Assembly: GCA_964057225.1 (NCBI GenBank)
Contig: OZ059896.1
Coordinates: 15,562,001 to 15,626,000, forward strand
Direction: 5' to 3'
DNA: 64,000 bases
DNA from: Auanema rhodensis
Taxonomy: Eukaryota > Animalia > Nematoda
The notes beneath the pieces are model-generated. The model was not told where the DNA came from. It did not search any database and was given only the letters and a program-made list of their open reading frames with translations. Shown here piece by piece: positions 1 through 42,680 of the stretch. Within the stretch, counting starts at the first letter, position 1; each line of letters starts with the position of its first letter. Both the position numbers and the translations under genes were made by a program.

Positions 1-69
1 TATCTTTAGTTACCTATATGGTATACGGTTAACTAGAAATGCTTTCGTTTTCCGAGACAACTGTTAGAC

Positions 70-210
70 AGCTTTGCGCAGTGGCGATAACGTGACCAAT
101 GAGGCTTTGCCGAGGTGCGTTTATTGCTGGTTGAAAACTTTTCCCAATTACCCGCGATATTCCCTGAAACATGGGTGATATACGCAATTTTTGAATGCCT
201 GATAAGGCTG
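70..210 (+). ncRNA. U4: U4 spliceosomal snRNA
   Basis: 5' AGCTTTGCGCAGTGGC (U4/U6 stem II), CCAATGAGG...CCGAGG kink-turn stem-loop, TTATTGCTGGTTGAAAACTTTTCCCAAT, Sm site AATTTTTG (186-193), 3' hairpin GCCT-GATA-AGGC; 3' end approximate. Confidence 0.95.
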
Positions 211-339
211 ATTAGCATATTATGGAAGATTGTTTCACGTGAAATGACGTCATTTTTCTCATGACGCGTCAATTTTCCAAACCAAATTAGAAGGAACGGT
301 TGCACTCCATACATATTCCGAAAAGAAAGGTAAGCATTC

Positions 340-458
340 GCTTACGACCATACCACGTTGAAAGTACGCCATCCCGTTCGATCTGGCAAGTCAAGCAACG
401 TTGGGCCCGGTTAGTACTTGGATCGGAGACGGCTTGGGAATCCCGGGTGCCGTAAGCT
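340..458 (+). rRNA. 5S: 5S rRNA
   Basis: 119 nt GCTTACGACC...GTAAGCT, close to nematode 5S, internal control region, followed by T-run. Confidence 0.98.
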
Positions 459-468
459 TTTCCTTTTT
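458..468 (+). terminator. Pol III oligo-T terminator of 5S (present in every unit)
   Basis: TTTTCCTTTTT directly after 5S. Confidence 0.85.
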
Positions 469-559
469 CTCATATTTTCATATAGTTTATCATCTTTAGT
501 TACCTATATGGTATACGGTTAACTAGAAATGCTTTCGTTTTCCGAGACAACTGTTAGAC

Positions 560-700
560 AGCTTTGCGCAGTGGCGATAACGTGACCAATGAGGCTTTGC
601 CGAGGTGCGTTTATTGCTGGTTGAAAACTTTTCCCAATTACCCGCGATATTCCCTGAAACATGGGTGATATACGCAATTTTTGAATGCCTGATAAGGCTG
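560..700 (+). ncRNA. U4: U4 snRNA
   Basis: array copy. Confidence 0.95.
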
Positions 701-829
701 ATTAGCATATTATGGAAGATTGTTTCACGTGAAATGACGTCATTTTTCTCATGACGCGTCAATTTTCCAAACCAAATTAGAAGGAACGGTTGCACTCCAT
801 ACATATTCCGAAAAGAAAGGTAAGCATTC

Positions 830-948
830 GCTTACGACCATACCACGTTGAAAGTACGCCATCCCGTTCGATCTGGCAAGTCAAGCAACGTTGGGCCCGG
901 TTAGTACTTGGATCGGAGACGGCTTGGGAATCCCGTGTGCCGTAAGCT
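830..948 (+). rRNA. 5S: 5S rRNA (single G>T variant near 3' end)
   Basis: array copy. Confidence 0.97.
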
Positions 949-1049
949 TTTCCTTTTTCTCATATTTTCATATAGTTTATCATCTTTAGTTACCTATATG
1001 GTATACGGTTAACTAGAAATGCTTTCGTTTTCCGAGACAACTGTTAGAC

Positions 1050-1190
1050 AGCTTTGCGCAGTGGCGATAACGTGACCAATGAGGCTTTGCCGAGGTGCGT
1101 TTATTGCTGGTTGAAAACTTTTCCCAATTACCCGCGATATTCCCTGAAACATGGGTGATATACGCAATTTTTGAATGCCTGATAAGGCTG
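1050..1190 (+). ncRNA. U4: U4 snRNA
   Basis: array copy. Confidence 0.95.
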
Positions 1191-1319
1191 ATTAGCATAT
1201 TATGGAAGATTGTTCCACGTGAAATGACGTCATTTTTCTCATGACGCGTCAATTTTCCAAACCAAATTAGAAGGAACGGTTGCACTCCATACATATTCCG
1301 AAAAGAAAGGTAAGCATTC

Positions 1320-1438
1320 GCTTACGACCATACCACGTTGAAAGTACGCCATCCCGTTCGATCTGGCAAGTCAAGCAACGTTGGGCCGGGTTAGTACTTG
1401 GATCGGAGACGGCTTGGGAATCCCGGGTGCCGTAAGCT
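1320..1438 (+). rRNA. 5S: 5S rRNA (single C>G variant)
   Basis: array copy. Confidence 0.97.
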
Positions 1439-1539
1439 TTTCCTTTTTCTCATATTTTCATATAGTTTATCATCTTTAGTTACCTATATGGTATACGGTT
1501 AACTAGAAATGCTTTCGTTTTCCGAGACAACTGTTAGAC

Positions 1540-1680
1540 AGCTTTGCGCAGTGGCGATAACGTGACCAATGAGGCTTTGCCGAGGTGCGTTTATTGCTGG
1601 TTGAAAACTTTTCCCAATTACCCGCGATATTCCCTGAAACATGGGTGATATACGCAATTTTTGAATGCCTGATAAGGCTG
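1540..1680 (+). ncRNA. U4: U4 snRNA
   Basis: array copy. Confidence 0.95.
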
Positions 1681-1809
1681 ATTAGCATATTATGGAAGAT
1701 TGTTCCACGTGAAATGACGTCATTTTTCTCATGACGCGTCAATTTTCCAAACCAAATTAGAAGGAACGGTTGCACTCCATACATATTCCGAAAAGAAAGG
1801 TAAGCATTC

Positions 1810-1928
1810 GCTTACGACCATACCACGTTGAAAGTACGCCATCCCGTTCGATCTGGCAAGTCAAGCAACGTTGGGCCCGGTTAGTACTTGGATCGGAGAC
1901 GGCTTGGGAATCCCGGGTGCCGTAAGCT
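1810..1928 (+). rRNA. 5S: 5S rRNA
   Basis: array copy. Confidence 0.98.
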
Positions 1929-2029
1929 TTTCCTTTTTCTCATATTTTCATATAGTTCATCATCTTTAGTTACCTATATGGTATACGGTTAACTAGAAAT
2001 GCTTTCGTTTTCCGAGACAACTGTTAGAC

Positions 2030-2170
2030 AGCTTTGCGCAGTGGCGATAACGTGACCAATGAGGCTTTGCCGAGGTGCGTTTATTGCTGGTTGAAAACTT
2101 TTCCCAATTACCCGCGATATTCCCTGAAACATGGGTGATATACGCAATTTTTGAATGCCTGATAAGGCTG
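2030..2170 (+). ncRNA. U4: U4 snRNA
   Basis: array copy. Confidence 0.95.
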
Positions 2171-2299
2171 ATTAGTATATTATGGAAGATTGTTCCACGT
2201 GAAATGACGTCATTTTTCTCATGACGCGTCAATTTTCAAAACCAAATTAGAAGGAACGGTTGCACTCCATACATATTCCGAAAAGAAAGGTAAGCATTC

Positions 2300-2418
2300 G
2301 CTTACGACCATACCACGTTGAAAGTACGCCATCCCGTTCGATCTGGCAAGTCAAGCAACGTTGGGCCCGGTTAGTACTTGGATCGGAGACGGCTTGGGAA
2401 TCCCGGGTGCCGTAAGCT
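2300..2418 (+). rRNA. 5S: 5S rRNA
   Basis: array copy. Confidence 0.98.
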
Positions 2419-2519
2419 TTTCCTTTTTCTCATATTTTCATATAGTTTATCATCTTTAGTTACCTATATGGTATACGGTTAACTAGAAATGCTTTCGTTT
2501 TCCGAGAGAACTGTTAGAC

Positions 2520-2660
2520 AGCTTTGCGCAGTGGCGATAACGTGACCAATGAGGCTTTGCCGAGGTGCGTTTATTGCTGGTTGAAAACTTTTCCCAATTA
2601 CCCGCGATATTCCCTGAAACATGGGTGATATACGCAATTTTTGAATGCCTGATAAGGCTG
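2520..2660 (+). ncRNA. U4: U4 snRNA
   Basis: array copy. Confidence 0.95.
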
Positions 2661-2789
2661 ATTAGCATATTATGGAAGATTGTTCCACGTGAAATGACGT
2701 CATTTTTCTCATGACGCGTCAATTTTCAAAACCAAATTAGAAGGAACGGTTGCACTCCATACATATTCCGAAAAGAAAGGTAAGCATTC

Positions 2790-2908
2790 GCTTACGACCA
2801 TACCACGTTGAAAGTACGCCATCCCGTTCGATCTGGCAAGTCAAGCAACGTTGGGCCCGGTTAGTACTTGGATCGGAGACGGCTTGGGAATCCCGGGTGC
2901 CGTAAGCT
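2790..2908 (+). rRNA. 5S: 5S rRNA
   Basis: array copy. Confidence 0.98.
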
Positions 2909-3009
2909 TTTCCTTTTTCTCATATTTTCATATAGTTTATCATCTTTAGTTACCTATATGGTATACGGTTAACTAGAAATGCTTTCGTTTTCCGAGAGAA
3001 CTGTTAGAC

Positions 3010-3150
3010 AGCTTTGCGCAGTGGCGATAACGTGACCAATGAGGCTTTGCCGAGGTGCGTTTATTGCTGGTTGAAAACTTTTCCCAATTACCCGCGATAT
3101 TCCCTGAAACATGGGTGATATACGCAATTTTTGAATGCCTGATAAGGCTG
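3010..3150 (+). ncRNA. U4: U4 snRNA
   Basis: array copy. Confidence 0.95.
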
Positions 3151-3279
3151 ATTAGCATATTATGGAAGATTGTTCCACGTGAAATGACGTCATTTTTCTC
3201 ATGACGCGTCAATTTTCCAAACCAAATTAGAAGGAACGGTTGCACTCCATACATATTCCGAAAAGAAAGGTAAGCATTC

Positions 3280-3398
3280 GCTTACGACCATACCACGTTG
3301 AAAGTACGCCATCCCGTCCGATCTGGCAAGTCAAGCAACGTTGGGCCCGGTTAGTACTTGGATCGGAGACGGCTTGGGAATCCCGGGTGCCGTAAGCT
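3280..3398 (+). rRNA. 5S: 5S rRNA (C39 type)
   Basis: array copy. Confidence 0.98.
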
Positions 3399-3499
3399 TT
3401 TCCTTTTTCTCATATTTTCATATAGTTTATCATCTTTAGTTACCTATATGGTATACGGTTAACTAGAAATGCTTTCGTTTTCCGAGAGAACTGTTAGAC

Positions 3500-3640
3500 A
3501 GCTTTGCGCAGTGGCGATAATGTGACCAATGAGGCTTTGCCGAGGTGCGTTTATTGCTGGTTGAAAACTTTTCCCAATTACCCGCGATATTCCCTGAAAC
3601 ATGGGTGATATACGCAATTTTTGAATGCCTGATAAGGCTG
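3500..3640 (+). ncRNA. U4: U4 snRNA (C>T variant)
   Basis: array copy. Confidence 0.93.
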
Positions 3641-3769
3641 ATTAGCATATTATGGAAGATTGTTTCACGTGAAATGACGTCATTTTTCTCATGACGCGTC
3701 AATTTTCCAAACCAAATTAGAAGGAACGGTTGCACTCCATACATATTCCGAAAAGAAAGGTAAGCATTC

Positions 3770-3888
3770 GCTTACGACCATACCACGTTGAAAGTACGCC
3801 ATCCCGTTCGATCTGGCAAGTCAAGCAACGTTGGGCCCGGTTAGTACTTGGATCGGAGACGGCTTGGGAATCCCGGGTGCCGTAAGCT
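3770..3888 (+). rRNA. 5S: 5S rRNA
   Basis: array copy. Confidence 0.98.
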
Positions 3889-3989
3889 TTTCCTTTTTCT
3901 CATATTTTCATATAGTTTATCATCTTTAGTTACCTATATGGTATACGGTTAACTAGAAATGCTTTCGTTTTCCGAGAGAACTGTTAGAC

Positions 3990-4130
3990 AGCTTTGCGCA
4001 GTGGCGATAATGTGACCAATGAGGCTTTGCCGAGGTGCGTTTATTGCTGGTTGAAAACTTTTCCCAATTACCCGCGATATTCCCTGAAACATGGGTGATA
4101 TACGCAATTTTTGAATGCCTGATAAGGCTG
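3990..4130 (+). ncRNA. U4: U4 snRNA (C>T variant)
   Basis: array copy. Confidence 0.93.
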
Positions 4131-4259
4131 ATTAGCATATTATGGAAGATTGTTTCACGTGAAATGACGTCATTTTTCTCATGACGCGTCAATTTTCCAA
4201 ACCAAATTAGAAGGAACGGTTGCACTCCATACATATTCCGAAAAGAAAGGTAAGCATTC

Positions 4260-4378
4260 GCTTACGACCATACCACGTTGAAAGTACGCCATCCCGTTCG
4301 ATCTGGCAAGTCAAGCAACGTTGGGCCCGGTTAGTACTTGGATCGGAGACGGCTTGGGAATCCCGGGTGCCGTAAGCT
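4260..4378 (+). rRNA. 5S: 5S rRNA
   Basis: array copy. Confidence 0.98.
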
Positions 4379-4479
4379 TTTCCTTTTTCTCATATTTTCA
4401 TATAGTTTATCATCTTTAGTTACCTATATGGTATACGGTTAACTAGAAATGCTTTCGTTTTCCGAGAGAACTGTTAGAC

Positions 4480-4620
4480 AGCTTTGCGCAGTGGCGATAA
4501 CGTGACCAATGAGGCTTTGCCGAGGTGCGTTTATTGCTGGTTGAAAACTTTTCCCAATTACCCGCGATATTCCCTGAAACATGGGTGATATACGCAATTT
4601 TTGAATGCCTGATAAGGCTG
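4480..4620 (+). ncRNA. U4: U4 snRNA
   Basis: array copy. Confidence 0.95.
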
Positions 4621-4749
4621 ATTAGCATATTATGGAAGATTGTTCCACGTGAAATGACGTCATTTTTCTCATGACGCGTCAATTTTCAAAACCAAATTAG
4701 AAGGAACGGTTGCACTCCATACATATTCCGAAAAGAAAGGTAAGCATTC

Positions 4750-4868
4750 GCTTACGACCATACCACGTTGAAAGTACGCCATCCCGTTCGATCTGGCAAG
4801 TCAAGCAACGTTGGGCCCGGTTAGTACTTGGATCGGAGACGGCTTGGGAATCCCGGGTGCCGTAAGCT
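4750..4868 (+). rRNA. 5S: 5S rRNA
   Basis: array copy. Confidence 0.98.
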
Positions 4869-4969
4869 TTTCCTTTTTCTCATATTTTCATATAGTTTAT
4901 CATCTTTAGTTACCTATATGGTATACGGTTAACTAGAAATGCTTTCGTTTTCCGAGAGAACTGTTAGAC

Positions 4970-5110
4970 AGCTTTGCGCAGTGGCGATAACGTGACCAAT
5001 GAGGCTTTGCCGAGGTGCGTTTATTGCTGGTTGAAAACTTTTCCCAATTACCCGCGATATTCCCTGAAACATGGGTGATATACGCAATTTTTGAATGCCT
5101 GATAAGGCTG
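4970..5110 (+). ncRNA. U4: U4 snRNA
   Basis: array copy. Confidence 0.95.
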
Positions 5111-5144
5111 ATTAGCATATTATGGAAGATTGTTCCACGTGAAA

Positions 5145-5321
5145 TGTTCCATACGTGTCCTATAAGTAGAGCTTATAAAACGGAACATTATAAAAACAAA
5201 TAGCTGACGCTACATTTGAGAAACAGGAATTCAATGCAACAATGAACGAACACTTTTTCATATTAAGTTTAATTAAAGAAAGCCCAATTCAAGCGGAACC
5301 TTGGGGAACCACCATGGAACG
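5145..5321 (+). repeat. Element A 5' LTR (177 bp, internally deleted)
   Basis: Matches 8663-9080 apart from 19-bp and 222-bp deletions and one substitution. Confidence 0.9.
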
Positions 5322-5342
5322 TGGAGGTTCCGCCGAGATTCG
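5322..5342 (+). promoter_or_regulatory. Primer-binding site, tRNA-Gln
   Basis: TGGAGGTTCCGCCGAGATTCG, complementary to the tRNA-Gln 3' end (...ATCTCGGTGGAACCTCCA, recalled), abutting the LTR. Confidence 0.85.
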
Positions 5343-5936
5343 TCTATAACCGACGAATCTCTAAGAACCATATTTCGCTACATAAATTTAATTTTGTTGT
5401 CTTTCATACATCTAATTAAAGAATTATATTTCGATTATGCTATATGAATTTAATTTGAAATCTTTCTCTTCTTTATTTCATTCATTCAAAGAACTTTATT
5501 TTGATTTTGATTCATAAATTAATACTGAAATCTTATATACATTTATTTAAAAAGATATATTTTGAAACAACTTAATTTTGAAATTTTATATTCATTCATT
5601 TAAAAGAAACATTTCGATTTTTATCCATATTCTAAGATCTTTCATTCATTTTTGAGGAAAAACTTTGTTTATAACTATCATAAATTAATTTGAAATTCTT
5701 TTATATTTATTCATTTAAAGAAAGGTATTTCGATATTTTTTTTTCTGTCAATCTTTTCTTTTACTGTTTTTTTTAATCAAAATCTATTCTATCTCTCATA
5801 AATTTTTGTTATAAAGTTTCAAACAATTTTTGAATCAAAAATGAATTAATTTCTTTCATGAATCATCACAAAATTCATTGTTTTATATATATTAAAATTC
5901 ATTAATTTCTATTCTATCCTTTAAAATGTATTACTC

Positions 5937-5940
<4 letters not shown>

Positions 5941-5972
<32 letters not shown>
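5941..5972. repeat. (AT)n microsatellite in element A
   Basis: About 16 AT units. Confidence 0.9.
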
Positions 5973-5976
<4 letters not shown>

Positions 5977-6205
5977 GTACAAAACTATTCTATACTAGTC
6001 CTATATTCCTACTATATTCCTACTATATTCCTATTTTATTTTTCTTTTATCTTCTTTTAAATTTTATCTTTTTCCCTCTCTTATTACTATTATTTTTTCT
6101 CTTCTTCCTAATATAACCCAGAAAACAGCCAAATAATTTTGAAATTTTTTATCTGAATCCCGAACCTAAGATTTACAATTTTGCATTTTGATCCTAAAAG
6201 TAGCC

Positions 6206-6690
6206 CGTGAGAAGCAATACCAGACTGTCTCGAGAACTGAGCGGAGGCAACCACTATTTTTGATATAAGACGTACGCATTCCTGATTTTGAAGATCCCTT
6301 TTTGGTCCTATTTTTGCAAATTTGAAAATTACGACAGAATTAGTCGAGAATGAAAGTGTTAGAGTGGTCTCACCATGAAAAATCAGGGGAGCAGAATTTC
6401 GTTAAGGGAGCGATTTCTGTGATTTTTCATAGGCAAGAGAAGTCTGGGAAAGTGAATGTACGAGGCCTGAGCACCTAATCTTGTCGAAAGACTGAAAGGG
6501 AATACTGCTTAGATCACCGTCGTATATTTCACGCCTATTCGAGAGATGGGAACTTGATCCTAGAAAGGGCGCACCGGTCACAGGCCCGTGTATGTACCCG
6601 ATTGAGCAATTCTCCGTTAGAAGATTCGCTGCAGGCTGGCCCCCTAGCAAGCGTCACGCATACAACCCCATATTGCCTCTCACGTTGTAT
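6206..6690 (+). other. Putative large structured RNA domain in element A
   Basis: Multiple nested inverted repeats (see findings). Confidence 0.6.
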
Positions 6691-6820
6691 ATATATTTTT
6701 ATAAGTTTCGCATCGTTGGTATAATAATTTCCTTTCCAGGAAAACCAACAAGATGACGGACTCGAAGAGTAAAAATCCTCCGCAGGATAAAACAAATCCA
6801 CAGAGCGCAGCCCCCCGGTA

Positions 6821-7192
6821 ATGATACGCACGTCGAGCCAGTACTCGAGCAGAATCAAAGAAAGAGAGGACCTCCAAATGTTTATGAGCCGGACACGAAG
6901 CGCCGACCTACTGCTGCAAAGAAACCACCCGCTATACCGGGTACCCCCGCGAAAAAAAATAGGCACAACAGCTATCAAAACTTCTCGCCACGCTATTACT
7001 CTTAGTAAAATTAAAACGTCTATTAACAAACAAACTCCTAAACGCAATTCTAACGTTATCAAAAGCTCTAGCTATGTTAGCACAAATACTTCCCCTTGTA
7101 AAGATTATTCTCAAATATCATTTTCATACCCAAATACTGCTATTCTTTCTTCTCCTCTTCCTCGAAATTCACCAAACTATCAGAGAAAATAG
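6821..7192 (+). CDS. Basic (K/R/S-rich) orphan ORF in element A
   Basis: 123-aa ORF; ATG overlaps the stop of a 22-codon upstream ORF (TAATG); no recognised domain. Confidence 0.35.
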   Translation: MIRTSSQYSSRIKEREDLQMFMSRTRSADLLLQRNHPLYRVPPRKKIGTTAIKTSRHAITLSKIKTSINKQTPKRNSNVIKSSSYVSTNTSPCKDYSQISFSYPNTAILSSPLPRNSPNYQRK

Positions 7193-7212
7193 AAGAAAAC
7201 GCAAGAAAAGAA

Positions 7213-7491
7213 TTGTATGAGGAACGGAAGAAGGAGCCACCCACAATTAAGAAATGGAGTTCAGCACTTAAATTGGCATTGGGATTAGAAGATAATTCTC
7301 CTACAACGCCAGCAAAGCCTTATCATGTGCCGATAAGGTATCACAGCACCATACCAGTAACAGAGCCAAAGAAGAGAGTTTCGAAGAGTCAGATCCCGGA
7401 CCCAAACTTCGTGGCACCAACAGTACCAGTCATCCATAAGAAAAGACCGTCAACAGTTATTGGGACTACAAGTAAGAAGCTAGAACAATAG
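7213..7491 (+). CDS. Basic/Pro-rich orphan ORF or exon in element A
   Basis: Frame open from 7102, overlapping the previous ORF; non-ATG start, so probably reached by splicing or frameshift if real. Confidence 0.35.
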   Translation: MYEERKKEPPTIKKWSSALKLALGLEDNSPTTPAKPYHVPIRYHSTIPVTEPKKRVSKSQIPDPNFVAPTVPVIHKKRPSTVIGTTSKKLEQ

Positions 7492-7856
7492 TAAAAATCC
7501 ATAATTTCTATATAAAAATCACAAAAAGTATAATAACATTTTCATAATTTTCATCTAAACTTGAACCTATATATGATTTTTTTTTCTCATTTAAGTAAGA
7601 CATAAAATTCTACACAAATTATTGTACATTTTTATTTTTTCACTCTCATAAAAATATTGTATCAATAACCAAAATTTCAAAATAAAATTATACATCATAC
7701 TTGGAATCTTTCAAAAATCACTGCAAAGTTTTAATCAACAATCTTCATCATTTTTTTTCACCTAACTGGTCAAAAAGGAGGCGACAAAAAGGAAGGAACA
7801 GACCGACCTAGTTTTAAAAAGGATAAAAAGGACAGAAAACAGTAACAAAGATAACA

Positions 7857-10663: not shown

Positions 10664-10701
<38 letters not shown>

Positions 10702-33882: not shown

Positions 33883-33936
33883 ATATGGTATACGGTTAAC
33901 TAGAAATGCTTTCGTTTTCCGAGAGAACTGTTAGAC

Positions 33937-34567: not shown

Positions 34568-34696
34568 ATTAGCATATTATGGAAGATTGTTTCACGTGAA
34601 ATGACGTCATTTTTCTCATGACGCGTCAATTTTCCAAACCAAATTAGAAGGAACGGTTGCACTCCATACATATTCCGAAAAGAAAGGTAAGCATTC

Positions 34697-34815
34697 GCTT
34701 ACGACCATACCACGTTGAAAGTACGCCATCCCGTTCGATCTGGCAAGTCAAGCAACGTTGGGCCCGGTTAGTACTTGGATCGGAGACGGCTTGGGAATCC
34801 CGGGTGCCGTAAGCT
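34697..34815 (+). rRNA. 5S: 5S rRNA
   Basis: array copy. Confidence 0.98.
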
Positions 34816-34916
34816 TTTCCTTTTTCTCATATTTTCATATAGTTTATCATCTTTAGTTACCTATATGGTATACGGTTAACTAGAAATGCTTTCGTTTTCC
34901 GAGACAACTGTTAGAC

Positions 34917-35057
34917 AGCTTTGCGCAGTGGCGATAACGTGACCAATGAGGCTTTGCCGAGGTGCGTTTATTGCTGGTTGAAAACTTTTCCCAATTACCC
35001 GCGATATTCCCTGAAACATGGGTGATATACGCAATTTTTGAATGCCTGATAAGGCTG
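34917..35057 (+). ncRNA. U4: U4 snRNA
   Basis: array copy. Confidence 0.95.
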
Positions 35058-35186
35058 AATAGCATGGTATAGTAGATTGTTCCACATGAAAAGACGTCAT
35101 TTTTCTCATGACGCGTCAATTTTCCAAACCAAATTAGAAGGAACGGTTGCACTCCATACATATTCCGAAAAGAAAGGTAAGCATTC

Positions 35187-35305
35187 GCTTACGACCATAC
35201 CACGTTGAAAGTACGCCATCCCGTTCGATCTGGCAAGTCAAGCAACGTTGGGCCCGGTTAGTACTTGGATCGGAGACGGCTTGGGAATCCCGGGTGCCGT
35301 AAGCT
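35187..35305 (+). rRNA. 5S: 5S rRNA
   Basis: array copy. Confidence 0.98.
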
Positions 35306-35406
35306 TTTCCTTTTTCTCATATTTTCATATAGTTTATCATCTTTAGTTACCTATATGGTATACGGTTAACTAGAAATGCTTTCGTTTTCCGAGACAACTG
35401 TTAGAC

Positions 35407-35547
35407 AGCTTTGCGCAGTGGCGATAACGTGACCAATGAGGTTTTGCCGAGGTGCGTTTATTGCTGGTTGAAAACTTTTCCCAATTACCCGCGATATTCC
35501 CTGAAGCATGGGTGATATACGCAATTTTTGAATGCCTGATAAGGCTG
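35407..35547 (+). ncRNA. U4: U4 snRNA (two-substitution variant)
   Basis: array copy. Confidence 0.93.
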
Positions 35548-35676
35548 ATTAGCATATTATGGTAGATTGTTCCACGTGAAATGACGTCATTTTTCTCATG
35601 ACGCGTCAATTTTCAAAACCAAATTAGAAGGAACGGTTGCACTCCATACATATTCCGAAAAGAAAGGTAAGCATTC

Positions 35677-35795
35677 GCTTACGACCATACCACGTTGAAA
35701 GTACGCCATCCCGTCCGATCTGGCAAGTCAAGCAACGTTGGGCCCGGTTAGTACTTGGATCGGAGACGGCTTGGGAATCCCGGGTGCCGTAAGCT
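35677..35795 (+). rRNA. 5S: 5S rRNA (C39 type)
   Basis: array copy. Confidence 0.98.
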
Positions 35796-35896
35796 TTTCC
35801 TTTTTCTCATATTTTCATATAGTTTATCATCTTTAGTTACCTATATGGTATACGGTTAACTAGAAATGCTTTCGTTTTCCGAGACAACTGTTAGAC

Positions 35897-36037
35897 AGCT
35901 TTGCGCAGTGGCGATAACGTGACCAATGAGGCTTTGCCGAGGTGCGTTTATTGCTGGTTGAAAACTTTTCCCAATTACCCGCGATATTCCCTGAAACATG
36001 GGTGATATACGCAATTTTTGAATGCCTGATAAGGCTG
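35897..36037 (+). ncRNA. U4: U4 snRNA
   Basis: array copy. Confidence 0.95.
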
Positions 36038-36166
36038 ATTAGCATATTATGAAAGATTGTTCCACGTTAAATGACGTCATTTTTCTCATGACGCGTGAAT
36101 TTTCAAAACCAAATTAGAAGGAACGGTTGCACTTCATACATATTCCGAAAAGAAAGGTAAGCATTC

Positions 36167-36285
36167 GCTTACGACCATACCACGTTGAAAGTACGCCATC
36201 CCGTCCGATCTGGCAAGTCAAGCAACGTTGGGCCCGGTTAGTACTTGGATCGGAGACGGCTTGGGAATCCCGGGTGCCGTAAGCT
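36167..36285 (+). rRNA. 5S: 5S rRNA (C39 type)
   Basis: array copy. Confidence 0.98.
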
Positions 36286-36386
36286 TTTCCTTTTTCTCAT
36301 ATTTTCATATAGTTTATCATCTTTAGTTACCTATATGGTATACGGTTAACTAGAAATGCTTTCGTTTTCCGAGAGAACTGTTAGAC

Positions 36387-36527
36387 AGCTTTGCGCAGTG
36401 GCGATAACGTGACCAATGAGGCTTTGCCGAGGTGCGTTTATTGCTGGTTGAAAACTTTTCCCAATTACCCGCGATATTCCCTGAAACATGGGTGATATAC
36501 GCAATTTTTGAATGCCTGATAAGGCTG
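36387..36527 (+). ncRNA. U4: U4 snRNA
   Basis: array copy. Confidence 0.95.
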
Positions 36528-36656
36528 ATTAGCATATTATGGAAGATTGTTCCACGTGAAATGACGTCATTTTTCTCATGACGCGTCAATTTTCCAAACC
36601 AAATTAGAAGGAACGGTTGCACTCCATACATATTCCGAAAAGAAAGGTAAGCATTC

Positions 36657-36775
36657 GCTTACGACCATACCACGTTGAAAGTACGCCATCCCGTCCGATC
36701 TGGCAAGTCAAGCAACGTTGGGCCCGGTTAGTACTTGGATCGGAGACGGCTTGGGAATCCCGGGTGCCGTAAGCT
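36657..36775 (+). rRNA. 5S: 5S rRNA (C39 type)
   Basis: array copy. Confidence 0.98.
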
Positions 36776-36876
36776 TTTCCTTTTTCTCATATTTTCATAT
36801 AGTTTATCATCTTTAGTTACCTATATGGTATACGGTTAACTAGAAATGCTTTCGTTTTCCGAGAGAACTGTTAGAC

Positions 36877-37017
36877 AGCTTTGCGCAGTGGCGATAACGT
36901 GACCAATGAGGCTTTGCCGAGGTGCGTTTATTGCTGGTTGAAAACTTTTCCCAATTACCCGCGATATTCCCTGAAACATGGGTGATATACGCAATTTTTG
37001 AATGCCTGATAAGGCTG
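36877..37017 (+). ncRNA. U4: U4 snRNA
   Basis: array copy. Confidence 0.95.
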
Positions 37018-37146
37018 ATTAGCATATTATGGAAGATTGTTTCACGTGAAATAACGTCATTTTTCTCATGACGCGTCAATTTTCCAAACCAAATTAGAAG
37101 GAACGGTTGCACTCCATACATATTCCGAAAAGAAAGGTAAGCATTC

Positions 37147-37265
37147 GCTTACGACCATACCACGTTGAAAGTACGCCATCCCGTTCGATCTGGCAAGTCA
37201 AGCAACGTTGGGCCCGGTTAGTACTTGGATCGGAGACGGCTTGGGAATCCCGGGTGCCGTAAGCT
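37147..37265 (+). rRNA. 5S: 5S rRNA
   Basis: array copy. Confidence 0.98.
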
Positions 37266-37366
37266 TTTCCTTTTTCTCATATTTTCATATAGTTTATCAT
37301 CTTTAGTTACCTATATGGTATACGGTTAACTAGAAATGCTTTCGTTTTCCGAGACAACTGTTAGAC

Positions 37367-37507
37367 AGCTTTGCGCAGTGGCGATAACGTGACCAATGAG
37401 GCTTTGCCGAGGTGCGTTTATTGCTGGTTGAAAACTTTTCCCAATTACCCGCGATATTCCCTGAAACATGGGTGATATACGCAATTTTTGAATGCCTGAT
37501 AAGGCTG
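37367..37507 (+). ncRNA. U4: U4 snRNA
   Basis: array copy. Confidence 0.95.
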
Positions 37508-37636
37508 ATTAGCATATTATGGAAGATTGTTTCACGTGAAATGACGTCATTTTTCTCATGACGCGTCAATTTTCCAAACCAAATTAGAAGGAACGGTTGC
37601 ACTCCATACATATTCCGAAAAGAAAGGTAAGCATTC

Positions 37637-37755
37637 GCTTACGACCATACCACGTTGAAAGTACGCCATCCCGTTCGATCTGGCAAGTCAAGCAACGTTG
37701 GGCCCGGTTAGTACTTGGATCGGAGACGGCTTGGGAATCCCGGGTGCCGTAAGCT
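37637..37755 (+). rRNA. 5S: 5S rRNA
   Basis: array copy. Confidence 0.98.
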
Positions 37756-37856
37756 TTTCCTTTTTCTCATATTTTCATATAGTTTATCATCTTTAGTTAC
37801 CTATATGGTATACGGTTAACTAGAAATGCTTTCGTTTTCCGAGACAACTGTTAGAC

Positions 37857-37997
37857 AGCTTTGCGCAGTGGCGATAACGTGACCAATGAGGCTTTGCCGA
37901 GGTGCGTTTATTGCTGGTTGAAAACTTTTCCCAATTACCCGCGATATTCCCTGAAACATGGGTGATATACGCAATTTTTGAATGCCTGATAAGGCTG
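37857..37997 (+). ncRNA. U4: U4 snRNA
   Basis: array copy. Confidence 0.95.
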
Positions 37998-38126
37998 ATT
38001 AGCATATTATGGAAGATTGTTCCACGTGAAATGACGTCATTTTTCTCATGACGCGTCAATTTTCAAAACCAAATTAGAAGGAACGGTTGCACTCCATACA
38101 TATTCCGAAAAGAAAGGTAAGCATTC

Positions 38127-38245
38127 GCTTACGACCATACCACGTTGAAAGTACGCCATCCCGTTCGATCTGGCAAGTCAAGCAACGTTGGGCCCGGTTA
38201 GTACTTGGATCGGAGACGGCTTGGGAATCCCGGGTGCCGTAAGCT
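38127..38245 (+). rRNA. 5S: 5S rRNA
   Basis: array copy. Confidence 0.98.
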
Positions 38246-38346
38246 TTTCCTTTTTCTCATATTTTCATATAGTTTATCATCTTTAGTTACCTATATGGTA
38301 TACGGTTAACTAGAAATGCTTTCGTTTTCCGAGAGAACTGTTAGAC

Positions 38347-38487
38347 AGCTTTGCGCAGTGGCGATAACGTGACCAATGAGGCTTTGCCGAGGTGCGTTTA
38401 TTGCTGGTTGAAAACTTTTCCCAATTACCCGCGATATTCCCTGAAACATGGGTGATATACGCAATTTTTGAATGCCTGATAAGGCTG
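38347..38487 (+). ncRNA. U4: U4 snRNA
   Basis: array copy. Confidence 0.95.
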
Positions 38488-38616
38488 ATTAGCATATTAT
38501 GGAAGATTGTTCCACGTGAAATGACGTCATTTTTCTCATGACGCGTCAATTTTCAAAACCAAATTAGAAGGAACGGTTGCACTCCATACATATTCCGAAA
38601 AGAAAGGTAAGCATTC

Positions 38617-38735
38617 GCTTACGACCATACCACGTTGAAAGTACGCCATCCCGTTCGATCTGGCAAGTCAAGCAACGTTGGGCCCGGTTAGTACTTGGAT
38701 CGGAGACGGCTTGGGAATCCCGGGTGCCGTAAGCT
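38617..38735 (+). rRNA. 5S: 5S rRNA
   Basis: array copy. Confidence 0.98.
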
Positions 38736-38836
38736 TTTCCTTTTTCTCATATTTTCATATAGTTTATCATCTTTAGTTACCTATATGGTATACGGTTAAC
38801 TAGAAATGCTTTCGTTTTCCGAGAGAACTGTTAGAC

Positions 38837-38977
38837 AGCTTTGCGCAGTGGCGATAACGTGACCAATGAGGCTTTGCCGAGGTGCGTTTATTGCTGGTTG
38901 AAAACTTTTCCCAATTACCCGCGATATTCCCTGAAACATGGGTGATATACGCAATTTTTGAATGCCTGATAAGGCTG
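38837..38977 (+). ncRNA. U4: U4 snRNA
   Basis: array copy. Confidence 0.95.
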
Positions 38978-39106
38978 ATTAGCATATTATGGAAGATTGT
39001 TCCACGTGAAATGACGTCATTTTTCTCATGACGCGTCAATTTTCCAAACCAAATTAGAAGGAACGGTTGCACTCCATACATATTCCGAAAAGAAAGGTAA
39101 GCATTC

Positions 39107-39225
39107 GCTTACGACCATACCACGTTGAAAGTACGCCATCCCGTCCGATCTGGCAAGTCAAGCAACGTTGGGCCCGGTTAGTACTTGGATCGGAGACGGC
39201 TTGGGAATCCCGGGTGCCGTAAGCT
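39107..39225 (+). rRNA. 5S: 5S rRNA (C39 type)
   Basis: array copy. Confidence 0.98.
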
Positions 39226-39326
39226 TTTCCTTTTTCTCATATTTTCATATAGTTTATCATCTTTAGTTACCTATATGGTATACGGTTAACTAGAAATGCT
39301 TTCGTTTTCCGAGAGAACTGTTAGAC

Positions 39327-39467
39327 AGCTTTGCGCAGTGGCGATAACGTGACCAATGAGGCTTTGCCGAGGTGCGTTTATTGCTGGTTGAAAACTTTTC
39401 CCAATTACCCGCGATATTCCCTGAAACATGGGTGATATACGCAATTTTTGAATGCCTGATAAGGCTG
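39327..39467 (+). ncRNA. U4: U4 snRNA
   Basis: array copy. Confidence 0.95.
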
Positions 39468-39596
39468 ATTAGCATATTATGGAAGATTGTTCCACGTGAA
39501 ATGACGTCATTTCTCTCATGACGCGTCAATTTTCAAAACCAAATTAGAAGGAACGGTTGCACTCCATACATATTCCGAAAAGAAAGGTAAGCATTC

Positions 39597-39715
39597 GCTT
39601 ACGACCATACCACGTTGAAAGTACGCCATCCCGTTCGATCTGGCAAGTCAAGCAACGTTGGGCCCGGTTAGTACTTGGATCGGAGACGGCTTGGGAATCC
39701 CGGGTGCCGTAAGCT
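39597..39715 (+). rRNA. 5S: 5S rRNA
   Basis: array copy. Confidence 0.98.
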
Positions 39716-39816
39716 TTTCCTTTTTCTCATATTTTCATATAGTTTATCATCTTTAGTTACCTATATGGTATACGGTTAACTAGAAATGCTTTCGTTTTCC
39801 GAGAGAACTGTTAGAC

Positions 39817-39957
39817 AGCTTTGCGCAGTGGCGATAACGTGACCAATGAGGCTTTGCCGAGGTGCGTTTATTGCTGGTTGAAAACTTTTCCCAATTACCC
39901 GCGATATTCCCTGAAACATGGGTGATATACGCAATTTTTGAATGCCTGATAAGGCTG
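39817..39957 (+). ncRNA. U4: U4 snRNA
   Basis: array copy. Confidence 0.95.
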
Positions 39958-40086
39958 ATTAGCATATTATGGAAGATTGTTCCACGTGAAATGACGTCAT
40001 TTTTCTCATGACGCGTCAATTTTCCAAACCAAATTAGAAGGAACGGTTGCACTCCATACATATTCCGAAAAGAAAGGTAAGCATTC

Positions 40087-40205
40087 GCTTACGACCATAC
40101 CACGTTGAAAGTACGCCATCCCGTCCGATCTGGCAAGTCAAGCAACGTTGGGCCCGGTTAGTACTTGGATCGGAGACGGCTTGGGAATCCCGGGTGCCGT
40201 AAGCT
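40087..40205 (+). rRNA. 5S: 5S rRNA (C39 type)
   Basis: array copy. Confidence 0.98.
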
Positions 40206-40306
40206 TTTCCTTTTTCTCATATTTTCATATAGTTTATCATCTTTAGTTACCTATATGGTATACGGTTAACTAGAAATGCTTTCGTTTTCCGAGAGAACTG
40301 TTAGAC

Positions 40307-40447
40307 AGCTTTGCGCAGTGGCGATAACGTGACCAATGAGGCTTTGCCGAGGTGCGTTTATTGCTGGTTGAAAACTTTTCCCAATTACCCGCGATATTCC
40401 CTGAAACATGGGTGATATACGCAATTTTTGAATGCCTGATAAGGCTG
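40307..40447 (+). ncRNA. U4: U4 snRNA
   Basis: array copy. Confidence 0.95.
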
Positions 40448-40576
40448 ATTAGCATATTATGGAAGATTGTTTCACGTGAAATGACGTCATTTTTCTCATG
40501 ACGCGTCAATTTTCCAAACCAAATTAGAAGGAACGGTTGCACTTCATACATATTCCGAAAAGAAAGGTAAGCATTC

Positions 40577-40695
40577 GCTTACGACCATACCACGTTGAAA
40601 GTACGCCATCCCGTTCGATCTGGCAAGTCAAGCAACGTTGGGCCCGGTTAGTACTTGGATCGGAGACGGCTTGGGAATCCCGGGTGCCGTAAGCT
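40577..40695 (+). rRNA. 5S: 5S rRNA
   Basis: array copy. Confidence 0.98.
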
Positions 40696-40796
40696 TTTCC
40701 TTTTTCTCATATTTTCATATAGTTTATCATCTTTAGTTACCTATATGGTATACGGTTAACTAGAAATGCTTTCGTTTTCCGAGAGAACTGTTAGAC

Positions 40797-40937
40797 AGCT
40801 TTGCGCAGTGGCGATAACGTGACCAATGAGGCTTTGCCGAGGTGCGTTTATTGCTGGTTGAAAACTTTTCCCAATTACCCGCGATATTCCCTGAAACATG
40901 GGTGATATACGCAATTTTTGAATGCCTGATAAGGCTG
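40797..40937 (+). ncRNA. U4: U4 snRNA
   Basis: array copy. Confidence 0.95.
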
Positions 40938-41066
40938 ATTAGCATATTATGGAAGATTGTTTCACGTGAAATGACGTCATTTTTCTCATGACGCGTCAAT
41001 TTTCCAAACCAAATTAGAAGGAACGGTTGCACTCCATACATATTCCGAAAAGAAAGGTAAGCATTC

Positions 41067-41185
41067 GCTTACGACCATACCACGTTGAAAGTACGCCATC
41101 CCGTTCGATCTGGCAAGTCAAGCAACGTTGGGCCCGGTTAGTACTTGGATCGGAGACGGCTTGGGAATCCCGGGTGCCGTAAGCT
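41067..41185 (+). rRNA. 5S: 5S rRNA
   Basis: array copy. Confidence 0.98.
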
Positions 41186-41286
41186 TTTCCTTTTTCTCAT
41201 ATTTTCATATAGTTTATCATCTTTAGTTACCTATATGGTATACGGTTAACTAGAAATGCTTTCGTTTTCCGAGACAACTGTTAGAC

Positions 41287-41427
41287 AGCTTTGCGCAGTG
41301 GCGATAACGTGACCAATGAGGCTTTGCCGAGGTGCGTTTATTGCTGGTTGAAAACTTTTCCCAATTACCCGCGATATTCCCTGAAACATGGGTGATATAC
41401 GCAATTTTTGAATGCCTGATAAGGCTG
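41287..41427 (+). ncRNA. U4: U4 snRNA
   Basis: array copy. Confidence 0.95.
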
Positions 41428-41556
41428 AATAGCATGGTATAGTAGATTGTTCCACATGAAATGACGTCATTTTTCTCATGACGCGTCAATTTTCCAAACC
41501 AAATTAGAAGGAACGGTTGCACTCCATACATATTCCGAAAAGAAAGGTAAGCATTC

Positions 41557-41675
41557 GCTTACGACCATACCACGTTGAAAGTACGCCATCCCGTTCGATC
41601 TGGCAAGTCAAGCAACGTTGGGCCCGGTTAGTACTTGGATCGGAGACGGCTTGGGAATCCCGGGTGCCGTAAGCT
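41557..41675 (+). rRNA. 5S: 5S rRNA
   Basis: array copy. Confidence 0.98.
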
Positions 41676-41776
41676 TTTCCTTTTTCTCATATTTTCATAT
41701 AGTTTATCATCTTTAGTTACCTATATGGTATACGGTTAACTAGAAATGCTTTCGTTTTCCGAGACAACTGTTAGAC

Positions 41777-41917
41777 AGCTTTGCGCAGTGGCGATAACGT
41801 GACCAATGAGGCTTTGCCGAGGTGCGTTTATTGCTGGTTGAAAACTTTTCCCAATTACCCGCGATATTCCCTGAAACATGGGTGATATACGCAATTTTTG
41901 AATGCCTGATAAGGCTG
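41777..41917 (+). ncRNA. U4: U4 snRNA
   Basis: array copy. Confidence 0.95.
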
Positions 41918-42046
41918 ATTAGCATATTATGGTAGATTGTTCCACGTGAAATGACGTCATTTTTCTCATGACGCGTCAATTTTCAAAACCAAATTAGAAG
42001 GAACGGTTGCACTCCATACATATTCCGAAAAGAAAGGTAAGCATTC

Positions 42047-42165
42047 GCTTACGACCATACCACGTTGAAAGTACGCCATCCCGTCCGATCTGGCAAGTCA
42101 AGCAACGTTGGGCCCGGTTAGTACTTGGATCGGAGACGGCTTGGGAATCCCGGGTGCCGTAAGCT
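42047..42165 (+). rRNA. 5S: 5S rRNA (C39 type)
   Basis: array copy. Confidence 0.98.
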
Positions 42166-42266
42166 TTTCCTTTTTCTCATATTTTCATATAGTTTATCAT
42201 CTTTAGTTACCTATATGGTATACGGTTAACTAGAAATGCTTTCGTTTTCCGAGACAACTGTTAGAC

Positions 42267-42407
42267 AGCTTTGCGCAGTGGCGATAACGTGACCAATGAG
42301 GCTTTGCCGAGGTGCGTTTATTGCTGGTTGAAAACTTTTCCCAATTACCCGCGATATTCCCTGAAACATGGGTGATATACGCAATTTTTGAATGCCTGAT
42401 AAGGCTG
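42267..42407 (+). ncRNA. U4: U4 snRNA
   Basis: array copy. Confidence 0.95.
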
Positions 42408-42536
42408 ATTAGCATATTATGAAAGATTGTTCCACGTTAAATGACGTCATTTTTCTCATGACGCGTGAATTTTCAAAACCAAATTAGAAGGAACGGTTGC
42501 ACTTCATACATATTCCGAAAAGAAAGGTAAGCATTC

Positions 42537-42655
42537 GCTTACGACCATACCACGTTGAAAGTACGCCATCCCGTCCGATCTGGCAAGTCAAGCAACGTTG
42601 GGCCCGGTTAGTACTTGGATCGGAGACGGCTTGGGAATCCCGGGTGCCGTAAGCT
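42537..42655 (+). rRNA. 5S: 5S rRNA (C39 type), last intact copy
   Basis: array copy. Confidence 0.98.
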
Positions 42656-42680
42656 TTTCCTTTTTCTCATATTTTCATAG

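What the first reader, a model, noticed from the sequence alone, without database searches (positions are those of the whole stretch)
1..42680. 5S rDNA array whose partner gene is U4 snRNA, not SL1
Seen: every 490-bp unit holds an intact-looking U4 gene and a 5S gene in the same orientation, 40 of each. No SL1 (GGTTTAATTACCCAAGTTTGAG) was seen on either strand. Known: in C. elegans and several other nematodes 5S is arrayed with SL1 RNA genes, and U4 is normally low-copy. Inference: a Pol II snRNA gene was captured and amplified 1:1 with Pol III 5S by concerted evolution. This raises the question of how U4 dosage is kept in balance with U6. I cannot confirm whether the arrangement has been reported.
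Basis: partly seen in the sequence, partly recalled or inferred. Interest (0 to 1): 0.8.

Follow-up and report, generated by a model that had tools for sequence, protein, structure and literature searches.

The report
Nematode 5S rDNA array carrying U4
A roundworm genome carries at least 40 tandem 490-base repeats that each hold one 5S ribosomal RNA gene and one complete U4 spliceosomal RNA gene, an apparently unreported partner in the known habit of 5S arrays of carrying a second small-RNA gene.

Summary
Rfam covariance models find 40 full-length U4 genes (115-118 bits, threshold 46) and 40 5S genes (101-108 bits, threshold 38). All lie on the + strand, one of each per 490-bp unit, and no SL1 is present. 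Only 19.6 kb is array; 23 kb is three young LTR retrotransposons inserted in the spacers, each with a target-site duplication. The array runs off the left edge of the window, so 40 is a minimum.

Units are 99.4% identical, and a five-unit block is duplicated in tandem, as expected from unequal crossing-over. U4 is the least variable part of the unit, and its few variants are wobble-compatible or unpaired. Compared with other nematode U4 genes it keeps its stems through compensatory changes.

The promoter is the weak point. The AACCCGCG-type proximal element seen at about -60 in other nematode snRNA genes is absent; only a weak look-alike sits at that position. Expression is untested.

The arrangement is not unique. 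Metagenome contigs with nematode-type U4 carry 5S+U4, 5S+U6+U5+U4 (a 1306-bp tandem unit) and 5S+U2+U1+U5+U6+U4+U3. I found no published report. Verdict: real, and a new variant of a known kind.

The parts
1..5144 (+). Array block 1: 10.5 units of 490 bp (U4 + 5S). It continues beyond the left edge of the window.
70..208 (+). U4 snRNA gene, example copy (139 nt). It has U4/U6 pairing regions identical to other nematode U4s, a 5' stem-loop with the CCAAUGAGG...CCGAGG internal loop, an Sm site AAUUUUUG and a 3' hairpin.
   Evidence: cmscan 117.9 bits, full model; alignment and pair counts; 34 of 40 copies identical
340..458 (+). 5S rRNA gene, example copy (119 nt), followed by T4 and T5 runs at 459-472 (Pol III terminator).
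   Evidence: cmscan 106.5 bits; sequence read directly
8..31 (+). Only candidate for a proximal sequence element of U4 (AGTTACCTATATGGTATACGGTTA, -62 to -39). It sits where other nematode snRNA genes have AACCCGCG...GTAYRYG and shares only ACC and GTATACG.
   Evidence: PWM score -0.6 bits against 10-22 for most training sites. 0.3% of fixed-position shuffles reach it. It is not the best site in the unit.
244..273 (+). Inverted repeat TGACGTCA...TGACGCGTCA (hairpin CGTCAT-loop-ATGACG followed by a T-rich run) between U4 and 5S, 36-65 nt after U4 and about -96 to -67 from 5S. Role unknown.
   Evidence: partly retained in the decayed edge unit
5145..9080 (+). E1: non-autonomous LTR element of 3.9 kb with no Pfam domain. 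The 5' LTR is 5145-5321; the 3' LTR is 8663-9080 and carries extra segments. Target-site duplication is GAAA (unit positions 241-244). Its terminal 8 nt match those of E3.
9081..10596 (+). Array block 2 (3 units).
10597..20355 (+). E2: BEL/Pao LTR retroelement of 9.76 kb. The 355-bp aligned LTR ends are 354/355 identical, with TG...CA ends. Target-site duplication is CCAAA (unit 282-286, about 55 bp upstream of 5S). One 2686-aa ORF (11101-19161) holds gag-like DUF1759, Peptidase_A17, RT, integrase and a phlebovirus-G2-like envelope domain.
20356..24503 (+). Array block 3 (8.5 units).
24504..33882 (-). E3: Ty3/gypsy LTR retroelement of 9.38 kb. The 366-bp LTRs are 366/366 identical. Target-site duplication is ATAT (unit 16-19, about 50 bp upstream of U4). 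A 1662-aa ORF holds a gB/Monjiviricetes-fusion-like domain, then protease, RT, RNase H and the integrase zinc finger. The integrase core lies in a separate overlapping ORF.
33883..42679 (+). Array block 4 (18 units).
22525..36807 (+). Five-unit block (unit types N-O-P-Q-G) present twice in tandem. The first copy carries E3 in its last unit; the second does not.
42680..42934 (+). Decayed array edge. It holds a partial unit without U4 (5S upstream region joined to the last 27 nt of 5S), then a roughly 72%-identical remnant of the spacer, the U4 upstream region and possibly the 5' half of U4.

Best explanation
This is part of the 5S rDNA tandem array of a nematode, probably a clade V (Rhabditina) species; the species was not identified. 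Each 490-bp repeat unit carries, in the same orientation, one 5S rRNA gene and one complete canonical U4 snRNA gene. The 5S gene has the Pol III features of an internal promoter and T-run terminator. The U4 gene can only be a Pol II/SNAPc-type gene, because its own T4 and T5 runs would stop Pol III.

The two genes are amplified and kept alike together by unequal crossing-over and gene conversion within the array. U4 therefore rides at a 1:1 gene ratio with 5S, as SL1 does in C. elegans. Three young LTR retrotransposons have inserted into spacers without disturbing the repeat phase.

Shown: the gene identities, the intactness of U4, the array structure, the homogenisation and the insertions. 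Inferred: that the array U4 copies are transcribed and supply much or all of the cell's U4, and that U4 entered a pre-existing 5S unit. U4/U6 balance is then most likely set after transcription, at snRNP assembly and turnover, not by gene number (established snRNA biology, not tested here).
For: - **Gene identity and count:** 40 full-length U4 and 40 5S matches, all on the + strand at a 490-bp period.
- **Copy variation:** 34 of 40 U4 copies are identical. The five variant positions give U-G wobbles or lie in unpaired regions.
- **Structural constraint:** Against seven other U4 genes, 11 of 34 predicted pairs show compensatory changes, and the window copy keeps the central stem with A-U pairs where others have G-C.
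- **Rfam score:** It equals those of the single-copy U4 genes of Caenorhabditis nigoni (120.6 bits) and Gnathostoma (116.8 bits).
- **Diversity by region:** Mismatch to the consensus is lowest in U4 (0.14% per site). 5S has 0.34%, the spacer upstream of U4 0.52% and the spacer downstream of U4 1.38%. Variable sites number 16/131 in that downstream spacer against 12/359 elsewhere (Fisher p=0.0006).
- **Homogenisation:** A five-unit block is duplicated in tandem.
- **Real insertions:** The three elements have target-site duplications and keep the phase, which argues against misassembly.
- **Host:** The best relatives of the E2 polyprotein are all nematode proteins (Ancylostoma, Haemonchus, Necator, 39-41% identity). 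The window U4 is 124/131 identical to the C. nigoni U4.
- **Linkage elsewhere:** 5S lies next to U4 in L003, L004 (tandem unit of 1306 bp) and L005.
Against: - **Promoter:** No recognisable canonical nematode PSE lies upstream of U4. The AACCCGCG core, present at -60 to -69 in eight of nine training genes, is missing. The best look-alike scores -0.6 bits, and the best PWM hit in the unit lies inside U4 itself.
- **Missing data:** There is no expression data, and the rest of the genome was not available. Dispersed U4 genes may exist and may do the work.
- **Diversity contrast:** It partly rests on one divergent linked haplotype. Counted as events, p is about 0.05. Homogenisation alone can also keep silent copies alike.
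- **Host:** The species was not identified.
Confidence: 0.78

Rival explanations
1. The array U4 copies are silent passengers. A U4 gene, or a promoter-less copy of it, landed in a 5S spacer and was amplified by the array's own turnover. Dispersed U4 genes with proper promoters supply the functional RNA.
For: The canonical AACCCGCG PSE is absent upstream. Concerted evolution can keep inactive copies uniform. About 7 of the 39 full units vary in the sequence just downstream of U4, where a 3' box would lie.
Against: All 40 copies score as full-length U4, and their only variants preserve the structure. U4 is the least variable segment of the unit. The other array-borne U4 genes (L002, L003, L007) and the Gnathostoma U4 also lack the AACCCGCG core, so PSE sequences differ among nematode lineages. 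A decayed edge copy shows what unconstrained copies look like here.
Confidence: 0.17
2. The U4 part is a retroposed, SINE-like or LTR-borne U4-derived sequence and not a gene. The array would then be a satellite built from a mobile element.
For: Small-RNA-derived mobile elements exist (cited in PMC10946416), and the array is a retrotransposon landing ground.
Against: U4 is complete to its 3' hairpin, with no A-tail, no truncation and no flanking duplication. The unit has no LTR or TIR structure, and every unit also holds a complete 5S with its terminator.
Confidence: 0.03
3. It is an assembly artefact: a collapsed or chimeric repeat that joins separate 5S and U4 loci.
For: Tandem arrays are error-prone in assemblies, and read data were not available.
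Against: Forty junctions of each kind are identical in phase. There is ordered variant structure with 23 unit types. Three insertions have clean target-site duplications. There is a decayed array edge. Independent contigs from other samples also link 5S and U4.
Confidence: 0.02

Closest known systems
C. elegans 5S rDNA-SL1 tandem repeat (about 110 copies of a 1-kb unit; PMC4138322, PMC1657053, PMC11822377)
   Same: It is a nematode 5S array in which every unit also carries one SNAPc/Pol II-type Sm-class small-RNA gene, amplified 1:1 and homogenised. Pol II and Pol III genes are mixed in one cluster.
   Different: The partner is U4, not SL1. The unit is 490 bp, not about 1 kb. The two genes share one orientation, whereas by my recollection they are divergent in C. 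elegans. SL1 RNA is consumed in each trans-splicing event, which explains its high copy number; U4 is recycled.
5S rDNA units linked to U1, U2 or U5 snRNA genes in fishes, bivalves and crustaceans (for example PMC3464664, PMC3544641; reported for metazoans by Vierna et al. 2013, which was not held and is cited from memory)
   Same: A spliceosomal snRNA gene sits in the 5S spacer and evolves in concert with 5S.
   Different: I found no case with U4 as the partner in the searchable library. This one is in a nematode, where SL1 is the known partner.
Metagenome contigs with nematode-type U4 found here: L003 (5S+U4), L004 (5S+U6+U5+U4, tandem unit of 1306 bp) and L005 (5S-U2-U1-U5-U6-U4-U3 on one strand)
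   Same: U4 lies within 0.2-2 kb of 5S, and in L004 it is in a proven tandem unit. The U4 sequences are 89-92% identical to the window's.
   Different: They carry further snRNA genes. U4 is on the opposite strand to 5S in L003 and L004. L004 and L005 have AACCCGCG-type PSEs, which the window lacks. The spacers are unrelated and the source organisms are unknown.
Tandem snRNA gene arrays (human RNU1/RNU2, sea urchin and Xenopus U1/U2; from general knowledge)
   Same: There are tens to hundreds of tandem, homogenised copies of a Pol II snRNA gene.
   Different: Those arrays hold U1 or U2 and are not built on a 5S unit.

Membership tests
U4 spliceosomal snRNA (Rfam RF00015) | Score at or above the curated covariance-model threshold over the full model | tested here: met
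   40 matches of 115.1-117.9 bits against a threshold of 46, model positions 1-138 of 138
U4 spliceosomal snRNA (Rfam RF00015) | U4/U6 pairing regions, 5' stem-loop with the kink-turn internal loop, Sm site and 3' hairpin | tested here: met
   Alignment with seven other U4 genes shows nearly all of the first 85 columns invariant, the Sm site AATTTTTG invariant and the stems kept with compensatory changes. The U6 partner from the same genome was not available.
U4 spliceosomal snRNA (Rfam RF00015) | SNAPc-type promoter (PSE at about -60) and 3' box, as in functional Pol II snRNA genes | tested here: inconclusive
   The AACCCGCG core seen in C. nigoni, L004 and L005 genes is absent. A weak look-alike lies at -62 to -39. 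The PSE of this species is unknown because no other snRNA gene of the genome is in the window.
U4 spliceosomal snRNA (Rfam RF00015) | A transcribed, TMG-capped, Sm-bound RNA | not testable with these tools
   No expression data were available.
5S rRNA gene (Rfam RF00001) | Covariance-model score over the full model, with a downstream T-run terminator | tested here: met
   40 matches of 100.8-107.7 bits against a threshold of 38. TTTT and TTTTT runs follow within 14 nt of the 3' end.
5S rDNA tandem array with a linked small-RNA gene | Head-to-tail units, each with one 5S and one other small-RNA gene, highly homogenised | tested here: met
   Period 490, 99.4% identity to the consensus, genes at 1:1, multi-unit duplication
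C. elegans-type 5S-SL1 unit | The partner gene is the SL1 RNA gene | tested here: not met
   No SL1 22-mer within 3 mismatches. No SL family at E<=1 in two units.
LTR retrotransposons (E2 BEL/Pao, E3 Ty3/gypsy) | Paired LTRs, target-site duplication, and protease, RT and integrase domains | tested here: met
   LTR pairs 354/355 and 366/366 identical. Target-site duplications CCAAA and ATAT. Pfam Peptidase_A17, RVT_1, RNase H, Integrase_H2C2 and rve.

The most novel reading that the evidence does not exclude
In some nematode lineages the 5S rDNA repeat serves as a general carrier and amplifier for SNAPc-dependent small-RNA genes. Cargo ranges from U4 alone (this window), through 5S+U6+U5+U4, to a 2.6-kb contig holding 5S, U2, U1, U5, an SL-RNA-like gene, U6, U4 and U3. 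In this genome the array would be the main or only source of U4. That would be a mixed Pol II/Pol III 'small-RNA factory' whose cargo has been swapped during evolution (SL1 in Caenorhabditis, U4 here).
Probability: 0.3. Interest if true: 0.6.

Novelty: new variant of a known kind. Interest (0 to 1): 0.45.

Why it matters
5S arrays that carry a second small-RNA gene are a classic case of unrelated genes evolving in concert, and of Pol II and Pol III sharing one chromatin neighbourhood. A nematode array whose passenger is U4, together with relatives carrying U4+U5+U6 or the whole snRNA set, shows that the passenger is exchangeable. It also offers natural material for three questions. Does gene dosage matter for snRNAs that are recycled? 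How do SNAPc/Pol II and TFIIIA/Pol III units coexist 100-130 bp apart? Why do LTR elements land in these spacers? It is also a practical warning for annotation: U4 copy number in such genomes will be badly misjudged wherever arrays are collapsed.

Tried and rejected
- **Exact look-ups:** Look-ups of ten spurious ORFs from the unit, meant to find the source species in public assemblies, found nothing. The E2 polyprotein has no relative above 41% identity. The species therefore seems absent from the protein collection and was not identified.
- **Cross-species PSE matrix:** A matrix built from nine nematode-type snRNA genes gave no significant site in the unit.
- **Edge unit as ancestor:** I considered that the U4-less partial unit at the array edge is a relic of an ancestral 5S-only repeat. 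I rejected this because the piece outside it still aligns to the U4 upstream region, so a deletion is more likely.
- **E1 as a deleted E3:** There is no sequence similarity beyond the terminal 8 nt.
- **Papers not held:** Thomas et al. 1990 (C. elegans PSE) and Vierna et al. 2013 (5S linkage survey) were not held. Statements about them are from memory.
- **Shared downstream words:** GAAGATTG and TGATTAG occur downstream of both the window U4 and the C. nigoni U4. They could be a 3' box, but the chance expectation is not negligible and 7 units vary there, so I make no claim.
- **Big protein search:** It was not used, because no claim here needed it.
- **Human-sequence rule:** The window is not human (nematode-type genes and retroelements), so that rule did not apply.
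Full report
**Observation**

Tandem Repeats Finder reports a 490-bp period at 98-99% identity in four blocks. Rfam covariance models at their curated thresholds give exactly 40 U4 matches and 40 5S matches. U4 (RF00015) scores 115.1-117.9 bits against a threshold of 46 and covers all 138 model positions. 5S (RF00001) scores 100.8-107.7 bits against a threshold of 38. All are on the + strand and alternate. The SL1 22-mer is absent on both strands even with three mismatches. A permissive scan of two units finds nothing besides U4 and 5S. Its first refutation test, failure of the U4 model at 70-210, comes out in its favour.

The stretch 1-42680 is not continuous array. The U4-to-U4 spacing jumps by 490+3940, 490+9764 and 490+9383 bp at three places. 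Walking the consensus unit into each gap shows simple insertions that keep the repeat phase.

- **E1 (5145-9080)** has target-site duplication GAAA. It has unequal LTRs and no recognisable protein domain, so it is a non-autonomous LTR element.
- **E2 (10597-20355)** has target-site duplication CCAAA. Its 355-bp aligned LTR ends are 354/355 identical. It has one 2686-aa ORF with BEL/Pao protease, RT and integrase, plus a phlebovirus-G2-like envelope domain.
- **E3 (24504-33882, minus strand)** has target-site duplication ATAT. Its 366-bp LTRs are identical. It has Ty3/gypsy RT, RNase H and integrase, plus a gB/Monjiviricetes-fusion-like domain.

Array DNA proper is 19.6 kb, or 40 units, and retroelement DNA is 23 kb. 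All three insertions lie in spacers. The window begins inside the array, so 40 copies is a minimum.

**Host**

The best relatives of the E2 polyprotein are all nematode proteins (Ancylostoma, Haemonchus, Necator at 39-41% identity). The window U4 is 124/131 identical to the U4 of Caenorhabditis nigoni, including the variable central stem. The flank is AT-rich (29-36% GC). I conclude that the host is a nematode, probably in clade V (Rhabditina). The species could not be named, because no protein of the window has a close match in the collections. The window is not human.

**Is U4 intact?**

Thirty-four of the 40 copies are identical. The five variant positions either turn a C-G pair into a U-G wobble (positions 22 and 36) or lie in unpaired stretches (positions 1, 79 and 100), judged against the consensus structure.

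An alignment with seven other U4 genes shows the following. The seven are C. nigoni, Gnathostoma, four nematode-type metagenome contigs and L001.
- Nearly all of the first 85 columns are invariant.
- The Sm site is invariant.
- 11 of 34 predicted pairs carry compensatory double changes. The window copy keeps the central stem with A-U pairs where others have G-C.

The Rfam score equals that of single-copy U4 genes in annotated nematode genomes. U4 contains T4 and T5 runs, so it cannot be a Pol III product of the 5S machinery.

**Homogenisation and constraint**

After removing the three insertions and their duplications, the 39 full units differ from their consensus at 0.6% of sites. The 117 mismatches, over the 40 units, split by segment as follows.

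| Segment | Mismatch per site |
|---|---|
| U4 | 0.14% |
| 5S | 0.34% |
| Spacer upstream of U4 | 0.52% |
| Spacer downstream of U4 | 1.38% |

Variable sites number 16/131 in the downstream spacer against 12/359 elsewhere (Fisher p=0.0006). The contrast weakens to p about 0.05 if one divergent linked haplotype is counted as a single event.

Writing each unit as a type letter gives ABCDEFGHHFG-IJK-LMNONOPQG-NOPQGRSTFGUGLNVW. A five-unit block, NOPQG, occurs twice in tandem. The first copy carries E3 and the second does not. That pattern is the footprint of unequal exchange in multi-unit register.

The right edge of the array (42680-42934) is a decayed remnant. It holds a partial unit lacking U4, with an internally deleted 5S. 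This is followed by a roughly 72%-identical trace of the spacer, the U4 upstream region and perhaps the first half of U4. U4 was therefore probably already in the unit when the edge copy escaped homogenisation.

**The weak point: the promoter**

I took the 100 nt upstream of U4, U5, U1, U3 and U6 genes in C. nigoni and in two metagenome contigs. In eight of nine genes, an element with core AACCCGCG followed by GTAYRYG lies at -60 to -69. The window has AGTTACCTATATGGTATACGGTTA at the same place.

A weight matrix built from the nine sites scores this -0.6 bits, against 10-22 bits for most training sites in leave-one-out tests. Only 0.3% of fixed-position shuffles reach that value. However, it is not the best hit in the unit, and the best-of-unit score is ordinary.

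The Gnathostoma U4 and the array-borne U4 genes of L002, L003 and L007 also lack the AACCCGCG core, so the element differs among nematode lineages. The test is inconclusive. No other snRNA gene of this genome is in the window to define its own consensus.

**Related arrangements elsewhere**

A 93-aa spurious ORF antisense to U4 served as a handle to find U4-bearing contigs in the protein-indexed assemblies. Ten loci were fetched and scanned.

- **C. nigoni and Gnathostoma:** solitary U4 genes.
- **L003 (755 bp):** 5S, with U4 on the opposite strand 184 bp away.
- **L004 (1413 bp):** a proven tandem repeat, with a 107-nt exact terminal overlap and a period of 1306 bp. Its unit holds 5S(+), U6(-), U5(-) and U4(-).
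- **L005 (2602 bp):** 5S, U2, U1, U5, U6, U4 and U3 on one strand, each with its own PSE.
- **L007:** two imperfect units of about 553 bp holding U4 only.

Their U4 genes are of nematode type. Linkage of U4 to 5S, and tandem amplification of U4, are therefore not peculiar to this genome. The window shows the simplest form: 5S plus U4 only, same strand, 490 bp.

**Literature**

Full-text searches combining 5S rDNA or rRNA with U4 terms returned no description of a 5S-U4 unit. The papers confirm the C. elegans 5S-SL1 array. They also show that the linkage is not universal in nematodes: Pristionchus pacificus and Oscheius tipulae have no 5S-SL1 clustering. Retrotransposon insertions in 5S spacers are known in other animals. 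Absence from this library is not proof that the arrangement is unreported.

**Mechanism and verdict**

The most likely reading is a functional 5S array that carries a U4 gene as a co-amplified passenger, maintained by unequal crossing-over. U4 level would then be set downstream of gene number. The main rival is that the array copies are silent. That rival rests only on the missing canonical PSE. It is opposed by the intactness, the low variability and the structure-preserving variants of U4. This is a new variant of a known kind, of moderate interest, and it has a clear experimental route to a decision.

Noticed in passing
window 10597-20355: E2 is an apparently complete BEL/Pao element. Its gag-like, protease, RT and integrase parts and its phlebovirus-G2 (class II fusion) envelope domain lie in one 2686-aa ORF. 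Its LTRs are virtually identical, so the insertion is very recent. The nearest relatives are hookworm and Haemonchus elements at only about 40% identity.
   Followed up: partly
window 24504-33882 (minus strand): E3 is a Ty3/gypsy element with identical 366-bp LTRs ending CG...CG instead of TG...CA. A herpesvirus-gB/Monjiviricetes-fusion-like domain lies N-terminal to protease and RT (aa 440-583 of the 1662-aa ORF), an unusual position for an envelope-type domain. The integrase core is in a separate overlapping ORF (25574-26656).
   Followed up: partly
window 5145-9080: E1 has no protein domain and unequal LTRs (177 against 418 bp). Its terminal 8 nt (GTTCCAT...ATGGAACG) match those of E3, so it may be mobilised by an E3-type integrase.
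   Followed up: partly
window 5141-5144, 10592-10596, 24500-24503 (insertion sites): All three LTR insertions lie in spacers: about 96-99 bp and 54-58 bp upstream of a 5S gene, and 51-54 bp upstream of a U4 gene. There are three in 19.6 kb of array, and I saw none in the 21 kb of flank. This is either targeting near Pol III or SNAPc genes, or tolerance of insertions in the array.
   Followed up: no
L005 866-1051 (minus strand): Between U5 and U6 a sixth PSE (GTCAAACCCGCGCAG) precedes an unannotated RNA of about 120 nt. It reads ...CCCGTATCAAAG|GTACGC..., followed by an Sm-like AAGTTTTTGG and a GC hairpin. This is SL-RNA-like but is not the SL1 sequence. It folds well (z = -4.0) and has no Rfam match.
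   Followed up: partly
L005 1-2602; L004 1-1413: A single 2.6-kb metagenome contig carries 5S, U2, U1, U5, U6, U4 and U3 on one strand. Another contig is a 1306-bp tandem unit with 5S, U6, U5 and U4, the three tri-snRNP RNAs together. The source organisms are unknown; the U4 is of nematode type.
   Followed up: partly
window 244-273 in each unit: The palindromes TGACGTCA and TGACGCGTCA form a hairpin followed by a T-rich run between U4 and 5S. The first palindrome survives in the decayed edge unit (42684-42698). It could be a shared regulatory site or a transcription barrier.
   Followed up: no
window position 39 of the 5S gene (unit position 378): Two 5S alleles (T in 24 copies, C in 13) are interspersed along the array. 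Three further single-copy variants exist.
   Followed up: no
window 43300-52200 (minus strand) and 52700-63900: The flank holds intron-rich genes. One has weak EGF-like hits, below the Pfam cut-offs (48486-48875). There are many (GA)n/(TC)n microsatellites, and GC is 29-36%. No RNA gene reaches threshold there.
   Followed up: partly
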